IMG/VR virus record: IMGVR_UViG_3300027996_002186
Coordinates: 372,001 to 436,000 of that record
Reading direction: 5' to 3' (one strand)
DNA length: 64,000 nucleotides
The notes beneath the pieces were generated by a model. The model had not been told where the DNA came from and ran no database searches. It saw nothing but the letters and a program-made list of their open reading frames with translations. A program made the position numbers and the translations under genes. This document shows positions 14,882-17,343 of this stretch, in pieces; the first letter of the stretch is position 1, and the number at the start of each line of letters is the position of its first letter.

Positions 14882-14912
14882 TTTGTTTTTCTTTCAATTT
14901 TGACTATATTTG
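14882..14912 (+). promoter_or_regulatory. Bacteroidota housekeeping-sigma promoter (-33/-7); probably also drives the RNase P RNA
   Basis: TTTG(14882)-N19-TATATTTG(14905). Confidence 0.8.
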
Positions 14913-14918
14913 TTAGAT

Positions 14919-15419
14919 ATGACAAAAGAGCAATTAGATAATCTTATTTACTTCACATTTCATTTCCACCAAACTATGGATATAAAAGTGTTTGAGTGTG
15001 ATAGAGATTATCTAATTGAAAAATGGAATAAATATATTGGTGTAAAACCAAAATCAGTAAATTTATCATTTGAGTTTTTTTCTGAAAATATGATTTATTT
15101 TCATTTAAATATAAGAAGATGGTTTACAAAATGGGATAAAAAAGGAGAACACTGGAATGAAATATTACCAGTTATTAACTTCATCAATGAAATTAACCTT
15201 TTAGACCCAGTTGGTAGACGATACCATCTCCATGAGCAGCAATTTACAAAGCAAATGACACCAGAAGATTTGGTTATGTTATTTAATAAACATATTGGTG
15301 ACGAAAAAGAAATTAATAAAAAAGAATACAATTCACTACATCAGTTAATTAGAAACAAAGTAACGAATTGGAAAACTAAATTACAAAGAGAATATAATCT
15401 GATGTTAGTGTTGGATTAA
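14919..15419 (+). CDS. Hypothetical protein, C-terminal tag variant
   Basis: Start moved to ATG 14919 (the track's TTG lies inside the promoter); ends LQREYNLMLVLD. Confidence 0.7.
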   Translation: MTKEQLDNLIYFTFHFHQTMDIKVFECDRDYLIEKWNKYIGVKPKSVNLSFEFFSENMIYFHLNIRRWFTKWDKKGEHWNEILPVINFINEINLLDPVGRRYHLHEQQFTKQMTPEDLVMLFNKHIGDEKEINKKEYNSLHQLIRNKVTNWKTKLQREYNLMLVLD

Positions 15420-15423
15420 AAAG

Positions 15424-15655
15424 ATTAGTATAAGTCAGAGAAGCTATCGCCGGTCCCGAAAGGGTGGAATATACTGGAGAAACCTCGACACTACTGAACC
15501 TAACGTGGGAGACAGTCTTCGGATAGTCGTTTTTACCACGGAAGTAGCGACACGTACAGACCTAGGGTATCGGTTCCCCTTTGATGGTCGGGTTTGTGGC
15601 AATAGATAGATGATAGCATAAAGCAAAATGTTGGGTAAGCTCAACTTATACTAAT
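15424..15655 (+). ncRNA. rnpB: RNase P RNA, minimal bacterial type A-like (catalytic domain only)
   Basis: P1 15424-35/15644-55 (12 bp perfect). P2 GCUAUCG/UGAUAGC. P3 CCGGU/ACUGG. P4 ACC-U-CGACA/UGUUG-GGU with bulged U15485. P5 CUAC/GUAG. P6 GAACC/GGUUC pseudoknot. P7 CGUGG/CCACG. P15 CACG/UGUG, P16 GACC/GGUC, P17 AGGG/CCCU. L15 GGGUU. CR-I GAGAAACCUC, CR-IV AGAUAGAU, CR-V GCAAAAUGUUGGGUA. Confidence 0.93.
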
Positions 15656-15672
15656 TTTTTAATAAAAAATAT

Positions 15673-15879
15673 ATGAAGAAAGGTGATAAATTAATCTGTA
15701 TTAATGAAGTAAATAACTTTTTAAAACAACCTCTTTTTGAAAAGAGTAAAACATATGATGTACTTTATGTAGATAATGAGGATGTTGAAGTTATGGTTTG
15801 TTTAAATCATAACTTATACGCGAATGAATATAATTCCTTCCCATTAGATTGGGTTAATAAAAACTTTAAACATGTATGA
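15673..15879 (+). CDS. Small hypothetical protein (SH3-like MKKGDKLIC start)
   Basis: 68-aa ORF directly after the RNA gene. Confidence 0.7.
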   Translation: MKKGDKLICINEVNNFLKQPLFEKSKTYDVLYVDNEDVEVMVCLNHNLYANEYNSFPLDWVNKNFKHV

Positions 15880-15943: not shown

Positions 15944-16531
15944 ATGTTTATAATTGACACAAATAGAGAAGATGTACTAAAAGATTTCCCATTCGTACAA
16001 GAATGGATAGACACTGCTCAGAAAGTTTTTATTAAAAAAGAAATCGATGAATCAAAAATAGAGTTTTATTACTCCTATGGGTTTTTTGTACCTAAGGTTG
16101 ATGATAAACAAGAACTATATGAAGATATGTATGAAAAGAGTTCTAAGATGTTATTTGAAGACAGATTAACTTTTGAGTTATCTAAGGTACGAGTTAATAT
16201 AACTATGAAGATCGGTAAATTTATACTATCTAATAGATTAGAGAAAGGAAGTATACCAGAAATAATTAATAGTATTGTTAAGGAAATAACTAAAGTTAAA
16301 ATGACAATAGAGTCAGAATATCATGACAACCAAGATGTGGTTGATTCTATTCCAGAAATTGATCCAGAGATAATAAAATTCGAATCGGTTAAAGAAATTG
16401 TGAGTAGTGATTACTCCGAGACTCCTGATTTTGATATTGATTTAATACTTGATAAAATCAATAAAAAGGGATTGGATGCATTATCTGATGAAGAAAAAGA
16501 ATACTTAGATAAGAAAAGCAAAGACCTTTAA
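15944..16531 (+). CDS. Hypothetical protein with C-terminal DUF6576-like module
   Basis: C-terminus FDIDLILDKINKKGLDALSDEEKEYL. Confidence 0.7.
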   Translation: MFIIDTNREDVLKDFPFVQEWIDTAQKVFIKKEIDESKIEFYYSYGFFVPKVDDKQELYEDMYEKSSKMLFEDRLTFELSKVRVNITMKIGKFILSNRLEKGSIPEIINSIVKEITKVKMTIESEYHDNQDVVDSIPEIDPEIIKFESVKEIVSSDYSETPDFDIDLILDKINKKGLDALSDEEKEYLDKKSKDL

Positions 16532-17343
16532 TGGATAGTAATAAAATATACAAAGGTGATTCTTTACAATTATTAAAGAGTATGTCTGATAATTCGGTAG
16601 ATCTAATTATCACATCGCCACCTTATGCTGATTTAAAAACTTATATTGATTTTAAGGGAATACTTGCTGATGATTATGTAGAGTGGTTTTTACCTTATTG
16701 TAGTGAAATATGTAGAGTTATGAAACCCACTGGTTCTTTTATTTTAAATATAAACGATAAAGTAGAAAAAAGATTTAGACACCCTTATGTTTTTGATTTA
16801 ATATCAGAGTTACATAAGAGAACAGACTTAAAATTATTCGAGAGGTTGTTTTGGAATAAAATGAAAGGTCTTCCTAATAGATATAGGTTTGGTGATAGAG
16901 TTGAATATTTATTCTGGTTTGCTAAAGATAAAAGTTTCTATTTCAATATAGATGAAATGAGAACAGAATATTCTGAAACTTCTATCAAAAGGATGAAGAA
17001 ACCACTAAAGAAGAGATATGCTAGGGATGGAGATTGTGATGAATATAAATCTTGGGCACCAAATCCAAAAGGAGCATTACCAACAACACTTATAAATATA
17101 TCATCAGAGTCTAAAAAGATTGCTGATAGTCACGTTGCGGTTTATCCCATCGAGTTGGTCAAGTATTTTATAAATGGATCAACCAAAGAAGGTGATGTTG
17201 TTTTGGATCCATTTATGGGAACTGGTACAACAGCTATAGCCGCAAAAGAATTGAATAGGAATTATATTGGATTTGAATTACAACCTAATTATATAACTAT
17301 TGCTGAAAAAAGAATAAAAGATTATGATAAGAATATCAAATAA
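16531..17343 (+). CDS. Orphan beta-class DNA methyltransferase (probably m4C)
   Basis: Catalytic TSPPY precedes SAM-binding LDPFMGTGTT. Confidence 0.92.
   Translation: MDSNKIYKGDSLQLLKSMSDNSVDLIITSPPYADLKTYIDFKGILADDYVEWFLPYCSEICRVMKPTGSFILNINDKVEKRFRHPYVFDLISELHKRTDLKLFERLFWNKMKGLPNRYRFGDRVEYLFWFAKDKSFYFNIDEMRTEYSETSIKRMKKPLKKRYARDGDCDEYKSWAPNPKGALPTTLINISSESKKIADSHVAVYPIELVKYFINGSTKEGDVVLDPFMGTGTTAIAAKELNRNYIGFELQPNYITIAEKRIKDYDKNIK

What the first reader, a model, noticed from the sequence alone, without database searches (positions are those of the whole stretch)
15424..15655. Phage-encoded minimal RNase P ribozyme: intact catalytic domain, no specificity domain
Seen in sequence: a GC-richer 232-nt intergenic island folds into the bacterial type A RNase P core in the correct order. 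P1 ATTAGTATAAGT 15424-35 / 15644-55. P2 15443-49 / 15611-17. P3 15450-54 / 15473-77, with a CCC-GAAA-GGG hairpin inside. P4 pseudoknot ACC-U-CGACA 15482-90 / UGUUGGGU 15629-36, with the bulged U at 15485. P5 15491-94 / 15544-47. P6 pseudoknot GAACC 15496-500 / GGUUC 15572-76 in the P17 loop. P15, P16 and P17 are present, and L15 reads GGGUU (15590-94), keeping the GGU that pairs with the tRNA 3'-RCCA. P4 differs from the E. coli-type AAG-U-CCGGG/CCCGG-CUU at most positions, yet every pair is kept; this covariation is strong evidence and could also hide the gene from sequence searches. P7 (CGUGG/CCACG) is capped only by a GAC..UC-UUCG-GA..GUC hairpin, so P8-P14 and CR-II/III are missing, as are P18 and P19. 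Established: the S-domain reads the tRNA T-loop, and the natural S-domain-less RNAs I know of are the archaeal type T of Thermoproteaceae. Inference: this is a bacterial-type, phage-borne, catalytic-domain-only RNase P. No rnpA is in the window, so it may borrow host RnpA or use a phage protein. Its substrate range may be relaxed or redirected (phage tRNA arrays, mRNAs, RCCA-ended hairpins), or it may sequester host RnpA.
Basis: partly seen in the sequence, partly recalled or inferred. Interest (0 to 1): 0.95.

Follow-up and report, generated by a model that had tools for sequence, protein, structure and literature searches.

The report
Phage-encoded minimal RNase P ribozyme gene
A giant bacteriophage carries its own stripped-down gene for the RNase P ribozyme, which trims tRNA precursors, and a gene for its protein partner elsewhere in the genome; I found no report of a phage-encoded RNase P RNA.

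Summary
Window 15424-15655 (+) is a GC-rich (~50% vs ~25%) intergenic RNA gene.

- **Structure.** In 17 distinct homologues, 596 of 611 core base-pair cells are canonical and 24 of 36 pairs show double compensatory changes. This includes both pseudoknots: P4 (130/136) and P6 (85/85).
- **Rfam.** The window copy gives no RNase P hit even at E<=10. Homologues with a more canonical P4 do: L066 hits RNaseP_bact_a at 43 bits (E=2e-12) across the whole model, with the S-domain and P18 skipped. Seven relatives score 24-43 bits, far below gathering.
- **Protein partner.** The same phage genome (a 483-kb IMG/VR contig, 100% identical to the window) encodes an RnpA protein (Pfam PF00825) about 350 kb away. 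Two other huge phages, LR745206 and LR756502, also carry both the mini-RNA and rnpA.
- **tRNA link.** LR745206 has 59 tRNA genes in tight arrays. In several other viral contigs the RNA gene sits inside tRNA arrays.

Best reading: a phage-encoded, catalytic-domain-only, bacterial-type RNase P holoenzyme that matures phage tRNAs. Catalysis itself is untested.

The parts
15424..15655 (+). Mini RNase P RNA gene (232 nt): catalytic domain only, no S-domain, no P18
   Evidence: Conserved island. Family HMM finds one copy in the window. Homologues hit the Rfam RNase P clan.
15424..15435 (+). P1 5' strand; pairs with 15644-15655. Extended by P1b, 15438-40 / 15640-42.
   Evidence: 12 perfect pairs. Five compensatory pairs in the 9-sequence set. 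RNAalifold predicts it independently.
15443..15449 (+). P2 5' strand (7 bp, the bacterial length); pairs with 15611-15617
   Evidence: 118/118 cells canonical and 3 pairs with double changes in 17 sequences.
15450..15477 (+). P3 arm: CCGGU/ACUGG enclosing the CCC-GAAA-GGG hairpin and a variable 3' bulge (15465-72)
   Evidence: Length varies between relatives: a 3-bp UACG hairpin in L034 and an extra hairpin in L006/L019. GAAA becomes GUAA, still a GNRA loop.
15478..15490 (+). J3/4 (AGAA) plus the P4 5' strand, ACC-U-CGACA, with bulged U15485 (CR-I equivalent)
   Evidence: P4: 130/136 cells canonical and 5 of 8 pairs covary. U15485 and C15486-G15633 are invariant. RNAalifold picks P4 on its own. 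The Rfam alignment of L066 places it on CR-I.
15491..15494 (+). P5 5' strand; pairs with 15544-15547
   Evidence: 67/68 cells canonical and all 4 pairs covary.
15496..15500 (+). P6 pseudoknot 5' strand, GAACC; pairs with GGUUC at 15572-15576 in the P17 loop
   Evidence: 85/85 cells canonical and 4 of 5 pairs covary. Variants seen: GAACC/GGUUC, UUGCU/AGCAA, CUUCU/AGAAG.
15504..15540 (+). P7 (15504-08 / 15536-40) closed by a stub (GA, UUCG hairpin 15511-28, GUUUUUA) in place of P8-P14
   Evidence: P7: 84/85 cells canonical and 4 pairs covary. The stub hairpin varies in length and loop type (UUCG, GUAA; longer in L066). Rfam skips the S-domain positions.
15548..15598 (+). J5/15 (CGA), P15 (15551-53 / 15596-98), L15 (GUACA / GGGUUU 15590-95), P16 (15559-62 / 15586-89), P17 (15564-67 / 15577-80)
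   Evidence: P16 and P17 show compensatory changes in L034, L066 and LR745206. The Rfam alignment puts CGGGU on the L15 consensus. P15 and P16 are poorly aligned in the more distant subfamilies.
15599..15636 (+). J15/2 (GCAAUAGAUAGA), P2 3' strand, J2/4 (AUAAAGCAAAA) and P4 3' strand (CR-V equivalent)
   Evidence: This is the most conserved stretch of the family. A pattern built on it matched only true copies in 101 loci and recovered 16 new viral contigs.
15656..15660 (+). U tract directly after P1; possible 3' end or termination signal (inferred)
   Evidence: A T run follows P1 in three of the four subfamilies examined first: the window type, L066 and, interrupted, LR756502. L034 has AUAUUGUU instead. 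No canonical terminator was found.
15369..15398 (+). Sigma-70-like promoter match (TGGAAA, 18 nt, TATAAT) 26 nt upstream of P1; weak evidence
   Evidence: not enriched over shuffles. The AGAGAAUAUAAU stretch is conserved in LR745206, L015, L017 and L024, and reads AGAGAGUAUAAA in L012.

Best explanation
Window 15424-15655 (+) encodes a 232-nt RNase P RNA descended from the bacterial type A ribozyme.

**What it keeps.** The catalytic domain: P1-P5, the P4 and P6 pseudoknots, P15/L15, P16, P17, and the J3/4, J5/15, J15/2 and J2/4 junctions.

**What it has lost.** The whole specificity domain (P8-P14) is replaced by one short hairpin. P18 is also gone.

**Proposed mechanism (inferred).** The RNA assembles with the RnpA protein encoded elsewhere in the same phage genome. 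Together they form a phage RNase P holoenzyme that removes 5' leaders from the phage's tRNA precursors. These tRNA genes are densely packed with 3-10 nt spacers, so one cut also frees the upstream tRNA's 3' side. Without the S-domain the enzyme cannot read the T-loop and D-loop. Substrate binding would then rest on the acceptor stem, the leader-RnpA contact and possibly L15.

**Shown:** the structure, homology to RNase P, purifying selection, co-occurrence with rnpA, and linkage to tRNA arrays. **Inferred:** expression, assembly and catalysis.
For: 1. **Homology.** L066 hits RF00010 at 43.3 bits, E=2.1e-12, over the full model with the S-domain and P18 skipped. LR756502 hits the clan at 32.4 bits, E=1.6e-7. 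L104, L106, L109, L115 and L103 score 24-37 bits. The window RNA is 77% identical to L066, blastn E=7e-30.
2. **Structure.** In 17 sequences, 596/611 core cells are canonical and 24/36 pairs have double changes. Slid controls give 31-42% canonical cells and 3-8 pairs. RNAalifold independently predicts P1, P3, P4, P5, P7 and P17, with 29 of 39 pairs compensated.
3. **Selection.** The RNA is 94% identical between phages whose flanking DNA is 62-83% identical.
4. **Protein partner.** RnpA (PF00825) is found in LR745206 (E=6.3e-13), in the window's own contig (E=1.2e-12) and in LR756502 (E=3.5e-13). The window is 100% identical to that contig over 11,884 nt.
5. **Substrates.** LR745206 has 59 tRNA genes in arrays with 3-10 nt spacers. 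In L114, L116 and L117 the RNA gene lies between tRNA genes on the same strand. In L106, L109-L113 and L118 it lies near tRNA genes; the nearest are 70-270 nt away in L110/L111 and about 1-6 kb in the others.
6. **Feasibility.** A type A C-domain alone is catalytically active, with reduced efficiency (abstract of PMC5839562).
Against: - No expression or activity data exist.
- The window subfamily departs from what I recall as the universal P4 consensus (the G72 and G74 equivalents are A) and has G at the A248-equivalent position. LR745206 and L066 keep A there.
- The window copy gets no Rfam hit at all.
- The gene is dispensable in some relatives. Sister lineages have only 28 nt at this locus, and L035 carries an internally deleted copy.
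- The phage tRNA genes do not encode CCA, so the conserved L15 GG has no obvious partner on primary transcripts.
- The tRNA content of the window's own genome was not examined, only that of a relative.
Confidence: 0.72

Rival explanations
1. It is a real RNase P-derived ribozyme whose main substrates are not ordinary pre-tRNAs. Candidates are phage mRNAs, tRNA-like elements or other structured RNAs. Loss of the S-domain would have retargeted it.
For: The S-domain, which reads the T-loop, is absent in every family member. In the window's own lineage the gene sits among protein genes, with no tRNA in 64 kb. The window subfamily's core sequence is unusually divergent.
Against: In other lineages the gene is embedded in tRNA arrays on the same strand. 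The related genome has 59 tRNA genes that need 5' processing. A C-domain alone still cleaves pre-tRNA (PMC5839562).
Confidence: 0.13
2. It is a non-catalytic decoy or regulator. It would bind RnpA (host or phage) or pre-tRNA and so modulate host tRNA maturation, without cutting anything.
For: The window subfamily deviates from the canonical P4 sequence and gives no Rfam hit. The RnpA-contacting regions (P2/P3, J2/4, J15/2) are the best conserved part.
Against: The phage encodes its own RnpA in three genomes. That makes little sense for a sponge of host protein. The bulged U, the C-G pair next to it and the A-rich J3/4 and J2/4 are invariant, and P6 and L15 are maintained. A mere protein-binding site would not need these.
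Confidence: 0.08
3. It is a decaying relic of a captured host rnpB gene with no current function.
For: The RNA is lost at this locus in sister lineages. L035 has an internal deletion. One copy is split by an HNH endonuclease gene.
Against: The RNA is 94% identical where the flanks are 62-83% identical. Compensatory changes preserve every core helix across at least eight distinct subfamilies. A pseudogene would accumulate disruptive changes.
Confidence: 0.04
4. It is a mobile element (MITE-like, with 12-bp terminal inverted repeats) or a cis-regulatory leader of the downstream 68-aa gene.
For: It has perfect 12-bp terminal inverted repeats and is present or absent between related phages. It ends 17 nt before the next start codon.
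Against: The 'inverted repeat' is helix P1 and it covaries. There is only one copy per genome in the window and in the two whole genomes read. G-U pairs and the UUCG and GNRA loops make sense only as + strand RNA. In L066 another gene separates it from the 68-aa homologue, and in other contigs it lies between tRNAs.
Confidence: 0.02

Closest known systems
Bacterial type A RNase P RNA (E. coli M1 RNA; Rfam RF00010)
   Same: The order and topology of P1-P2-P3-P4-P5 match. So do the 7-bp P2 stacked on P3, the P4 geometry (3 bp, bulged U, 5 bp), the P6 pseudoknot to the P17 loop, the P15/L15/P16 arm with GGGU on its 3' side, the 3-nt J5/15, the UAGAU..AUG J15/2 motif and the A-rich 11-nt J2/4. It also has an RnpA-type protein partner. 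A relative aligns to the full model.
   Different: There is no S-domain (P8-P14, CR-II/III) and no P18. It is 205-294 nt long instead of about 350-400. The window subfamily has changed most P4 base pairs. All copies score far below the Rfam gathering threshold. It is encoded by phages.
[quoted passage not shown]
   Same: It is a natural RNase P RNA that keeps the catalytic domain and lacks most of the specificity domain, with P10 ending in a small loop or missing. Standard models likewise miss it.
   Different: Type T has a 3-bp P2, a 2-nt P5/P15 linker and archaeal protein partners. The phage RNA has a 7-bp P2, a 3-nt linker, P6/P16/P17 and a bacterial RnpA partner. The two are independent reductions.
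Engineered C-domain-only type A ribozymes (e.g. Eco CP RPR; PMC5839562)
   Same: It is the same part of the molecule, and that part is known to cleave substrates without the S-domain.
   Different: Those are laboratory deletions with reduced efficiency. This is a natural, selected form that also lacks P18 and comes with its own co-encoded protein.
Strongly reduced organellar RNase P RNAs (yeast mitochondrial type; from my own knowledge, not checked here)
   Same: They show drastic loss of peripheral helices around a retained P1/P4 core, in an AT-rich genome.
   Different: The organellar forms lose much of the C-domain periphery too and use different proteins. The phage RNA keeps a complete bacterial C-domain apart from P18.

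Membership tests
RNase P RNA, bacterial type A (RF00010 / clan CL00002) | Covariance-model match at the curated gathering score | tested here: not met
   Window: no hit at gathering or at E<=10. Relatives score 24-43 bits against thresholds of 84-100.
RNase P RNA, bacterial type A (RF00010 / clan CL00002) | Statistically significant homology to the family, directly or through intermediates | tested here: met
   L066: E=2.1e-12 over model positions 1-367. Window vs L066: 77% identity, E=7e-30. Six more clan hits with E from 1.6e-7 to 4e-3.
RNase P RNA, bacterial type A (RF00010 / clan CL00002) | P4 long-range helix with a bulged U, flanked by A-rich J3/4 and J2/4 (CR-I / CR-V) | tested here: met
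   3 bp, U, 5 bp geometry. 130/136 cells canonical and 5/8 pairs covary. The bulged U and the adjacent C-G pair are invariant.
RNase P RNA, bacterial type A (RF00010 / clan CL00002) | Universal CR-I / CR-V nucleotide identities | tested here: inconclusive
   The window keeps the equivalents of A65, A66, U69 and C70 but has A at the G72 and G74 equivalents and GCAAAA where the consensus is ACAGAA. L066 and LR756502 carry GAGGAAGUUC and AACAGAA. The consensus list is from my memory.
RNase P RNA, bacterial type A (RF00010 / clan CL00002) | P6 pseudoknot between J5/7 and the P17 loop (a type A feature) | tested here: met
   85/85 cells canonical and 4/5 pairs covary, with at least five different helix sequences, three of them quoted in the P6 part entry.
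RNase P RNA, bacterial type A (RF00010 / clan CL00002) | P15-L15-P16 internal loop with GGU on the 3' side | tested here: met
   GGGUUU at 15590-95. The Rfam alignment puts CGGGU on the L15 consensus. GG is kept in all 17 sequences. P15/P16 pairing is weakly supported in distant subfamilies.
RNase P RNA, bacterial type A (RF00010 / clan CL00002) | Specificity domain (P8-P14, CR-II/III) | tested here: not met
   Only 27 nt lie between the P7 strands in the window, and 16-128 nt in relatives. Rfam treats these model positions as skipped.
RNase P RNA, bacterial type A (RF00010 / clan CL00002) | P18 | tested here: not met
   The 24 model positions of P18 are matched by 0 nt. J15/2 is 11-13 nt in the four subfamilies checked.
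RNase P RNA, bacterial type A (RF00010 / clan CL00002) | Works with an RnpA (PF00825) protein | tested here: inconclusive
   rnpA is encoded in the same genome in three phages. Physical association could not be tested.
RNase P RNA, bacterial type A (RF00010 / clan CL00002) | Endonucleolytic removal of pre-tRNA 5' leaders | not testable with these tools
   Needs a biochemical assay.
[quoted passage not shown] | 3-bp P2, 2-nt P5/P15 linker, archaeal type A-like C-domain (PMC3579882) | tested here: not met
   P2 is 7 bp and J5/15 is 3 nt. There was no RF02357 hit. The partner protein is bacterial RnpA.

The most novel reading that the evidence does not exclude
Huge phages carry a complete, self-encoded minimal RNase P holoenzyme: a 205-294 nt C-domain-only bacterial-type ribozyme plus a phage RnpA. 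It would mature their dense tRNA arrays independently of the host enzyme and without T-loop recognition. If so, it would be the first viral RNase P known to me and, as far as I know, the smallest natural bacterial-type RNase P RNA. It would form a family that current models cannot detect.
Probability: 0.65. Interest if true: 0.92.

Novelty: new variant of a known kind. Interest (0 to 1): 0.88.

Why it matters
RNase P is regarded as a universal cellular housekeeping ribozyme. Seven full-text searches of about 8.4 million papers and preprints found no report of a phage-encoded RNase P RNA or RnpA.

If this enzyme is active:
- It extends the list of translation-related functions that huge phages bring with them to tRNA 5' maturation.
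- It gives a natural bacterial-type enzyme that has discarded the specificity domain and P18. That is a ready-made minimal system for asking what the S-domain is really needed for.
- It parallels the independent reduction seen in archaeal type T.

The family also shows a practical blind spot. All members score 24-43 bits or nothing against Rfam models whose thresholds are 84-100 bits, so genome annotation misses them.

Tried and rejected
**Searches that found nothing new.**
- Rfam on the window at gathering and at E<=10 gave no RNase P hit. The same held for L034 and the LR745206-type copy.
- Single-sequence MFE folding was uninformative.
- Exact-pattern scans built on window-type sequence returned only near-identical copies or chance hits (viral; metagenome; genome). 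One viral scan was wasted on a mis-spaced pattern.
- Weak blastn hits of the L066 RNA in LR756500 and LR756511 were not RNase P.
- No RnpA was found in the short flanks of the new viral loci.

**What did work.**
- Walking out through the flanking proteins.
- A pattern built on the conserved J15/2-P2-J2/4 junction.

**Interpretations considered and rejected.**
- Mobile element with terminal inverted repeats: the repeats are a covarying P1.
- Riboswitch or leader of the 68-aa gene: the context is not conserved.
- Retron or DGR RNA: no reverse transcriptase gene is nearby.
- An element on the minus strand: the G-U pairs and tetraloops only fit the + strand.

**Not attempted.**
- I did not build a covariance model.
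- I did not use the count of structure pairs, because it would have needed a long typed structure string. Scripts did the same counts, including the pseudoknots.

Full report
**1. The observation**

Window 15424-15655 lies in a 253-nt gap between two + strand ORFs, 14910-15419 and 15673-15879. Its GC content is 42-52%, against 17-35% around it.
- P1, 12 bp, plus a 3-bp extension.
- P2, 7 bp, abutting P3.
- P3 with a CCC-GAAA-GGG hairpin.
- P4 as 3 bp, bulged U15485, 5 bp.
- P5 directly after P4.
- P6, GAACC/GGUUC.
- P7, closed by a UUCG hairpin.

The thermodynamic fold of the single sequence is not informative (z = -0.57). It cannot draw pseudoknots. The window has no Rfam hit at gathering, no RNase P hit even at E<=10, and no tRNA gene.

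**2. Finding relatives**

blastn against phage records found one relative, the 634,780-bp uncultured phage LR745206. Pattern scans built on window-type sequence returned only near-identical copies or chance hits.

Walking out through the flanking proteins gave the informative sequences:
- L034, 212 nt, 66% identical to the window RNA.
- L066, 262 nt, 77% identical (blastn E=7e-30).

The RNA is under much stronger constraint than its surroundings. Between the window and LR745206 it is 94% identical, while the flanking DNA is 62-83% identical. The upstream protein is 59% identical.

**3. Identity**

The L066 copy has near-canonical core motifs, GGAGGAAGUUCAGG and AACAGAAUCCUGGCUA. It matches Rfam RNaseP_bact_a over the entire model (1-367) with 43.3 bits, E=2.1e-12. 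It skips the S-domain positions and gives P18 zero nucleotides.

Because the window RNA is plainly homologous to L066, it is an RNase P RNA derivative. This is borne out: the window type and L034 are invisible to Rfam.

**4. A family, not a singleton**

A second huge phage, LR756502 (642,428 bp), has a 205-nt homologue. nhmmer gives E=5e-15 and the Rfam RNase P clan hit is 32.4 bits, E=1.6e-7.

I built a pattern on the invariant J15/2-P2-J2/4 stretch. It matched only true copies in the 101 loci held, about 1.7 Mb including two whole huge-phage genomes. It then recovered 16 further IMG/VR contigs, confirmed by nhmmer at E from 1e-15 to 1e-32. Five of these give RNase P clan hits of 24-37 bits.

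Members are 205-294 nt long. All have only a hairpin or short arm inside P7, and none has a P18.

**5. Structure by comparison**

In the first 9 distinct sequences, 26 of 66 proposed pairs show double compensatory changes. Slid controls give 0-3. In 2000 random helix sets the mean is 1.35 and the maximum 7.

In the 17-sequence alignment A5 I scored the core helices P1b, P2, P4, P5, P6, P7 and P17:
- 596 of 611 cells are canonical.
- 24 of 36 pairs have double changes.
- Slid controls give 31-42% canonical cells and 3-8 such pairs.

For the two pseudoknots:
- P4 has 130/136 canonical cells. Five of its eight pairs covary, with up to three pair types at one position.
- P6 has 85/85 canonical cells. 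Four of its five pairs covary.
- The bulged U and the neighbouring C-G pair never change.

RNAalifold was given only the alignment. It independently predicts P1, P3, P4 (with the bulge), P5, P7, the stub hairpin and P17, with 29 of 39 pairs compensated.

The P17 loop has 9 nt and its last five bases form P6. P15 and P16 are not well aligned in the most distant subfamilies and remain the weakest part of the model.

**6. The protein partner**

LR745206, however, encodes a 103-aa protein that matches Pfam Ribonuclease_P (PF00825) at E=6.3e-13, 49 bits against a cut-off of 22, with a recognisable RNR motif.

The window is 100% identical over 11,884 nt to IMG/VR contig 3300027996_002186. That contig encodes an RnpA homologue, 75% identical to the LR745206 protein and matching PF00825 at E=1.2e-12, about 350 kb from the RNA gene. 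LR756502 also has one. So three genomes carry both subunits. Among 50,697 phage records, only those two records have a detectable relative of this RnpA.

**7. Substrates**

LR745206 has 59 tRNA genes, most of them in arrays with 3-10 nt A-rich spacers that usually end in U. None encodes CCA.

In other viral contigs the mini-RNase P gene lies within or beside tRNA arrays on the same strand. In L117 the order is tRNA-Thr, then the RNA, then tRNA-Gly 4 nt later. L114 and L116 carry the same sequence. L106, L109-L113 and L118 have tRNA genes nearby: the nearest are 70-270 nt from the RNA in L110/L111 and about 1-6 kb away in the others.

This context, together with a co-encoded RnpA, favours a working tRNA-processing enzyme over a decoy. 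A type A C-domain alone is known to be catalytically competent at reduced efficiency (PMC5839562).

**8. Caveats**

- Nothing here shows transcription or cleavage.
- The window subfamily has drifted from what I recall as universal P4 identities. It has G where LR745206 and L066 keep the A248-equivalent A.
- The gene is dispensable. Sister lineages have only 28 nt between the same two flanking genes, or no gap at all. One relative, L035, carries an internal deletion between two CGACAC repeats.
- The conserved L15 GG has no encoded CCA to pair with on primary transcripts.
- E. coli numbering and the list of universal nucleotides come from my own knowledge, not from a tool.

**9. Comparison with known systems and novelty**

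The RNA works like, and descends from, bacterial type A RNase P RNA. It fails the curated Rfam threshold and lacks two defining modules, the S-domain and P18.

It resembles archaeal type T in having lost the S-domain, but it differs in P2 length, in the P5/P15 linker and in its protein partner (PMC3579882). The two reductions are therefore independent.

Seven full-text searches found no report of a phage-encoded RNase P RNA or RnpA. I rate it a new variant of a known kind, of high interest.

Noticed in passing
L035:504-663: A relative carries an internally deleted copy of the RNA. The stretch from P4/P5 to J5/15 is missing, with the breakpoint at the direct repeat CGACAC (window 15486-91 and 15548-53), plus a second small deletion. 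The downstream 68-aa gene is also truncated. It looks like gene decay in progress, or an assembly artefact.
   Followed up: partly
L058-L065 (gap 1473-1500 in L058); L069, L070: Sister phage lineages (526-611 kb genomes) keep both flanking genes but have only 28 nt, or no gap, where the RNA gene would be. The RNA is therefore an accessory gene at this locus. Whether those phages also lack rnpA, or carry the RNA elsewhere, could not be checked.
   Followed up: partly
L111:8620-9307 (- strand); same in L110: One family member is split by a 487-nt insertion just before P17. The insertion carries a 136-aa ORF with HNH_3 (E=2.7e-14) and NUMOD4 domains, i.e. a homing-endonuclease gene. No group I intron was detected by Rfam. 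It could be an undetected intron, a two-piece RNase P RNA or a disrupted gene.
   Followed up: partly
L113:312-770 and 934-1179: A GOLLD RNA (155 bits, above gathering) and a group I intron (94.5 bits) lie about 1-1.4 kb upstream of the mini-RNase P gene in one viral contig, among tRNA genes. This is an 'RNA island'.
   Followed up: no
LR745206 record 342554-421559 (loci L077-L079): LR745206 has 59 tRNA genes, mostly in four arrays with 3-10 nt A-rich spacers, and none encodes CCA. There are several odd predictions: 82-92 nt Lys, Asn, Arg, Leu (UAA) and Gln genes, one with a 4-base anticodon (gtag) and one with an undetermined anticodon.
   Followed up: partly
L105:6112-6186: ARAGORN calls a tRNA-Pyl in a contig that carries the mini-RNase P. 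If that label means a CUA anticodon (not shown in the output), this is an amber-suppressor-type tRNA, which would hint at stop-codon recoding in that phage.
   Followed up: no
L006:1265-1510 (-), L019:2916-3161: Two relatives have an extra AUCUC...GAGAU hairpin inserted in the 3' bulge of P3, and a GUAA loop instead of GAAA. P3 is the expansion site of this family. L109, L106 and L108 have longer P3 arms still.
   Followed up: yes
window 15484 and 15632: C15484U always occurs together with U15632C in window-type sequences, apparently in more than one lineage. A C-G pair weakened to U-G comes with a G-U pair strengthened to G-C in the same helix (P4). This suggests selection on helix stability.
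   Followed up: partly
window 15944-17343: Downstream genes: a DUF6576 protein (15944-16531) and an N6/N4 DNA methyltransferase (16531-17343). Neighbours with CHU_C domains in related contigs point to a Bacteroidota host.
   Followed up: no
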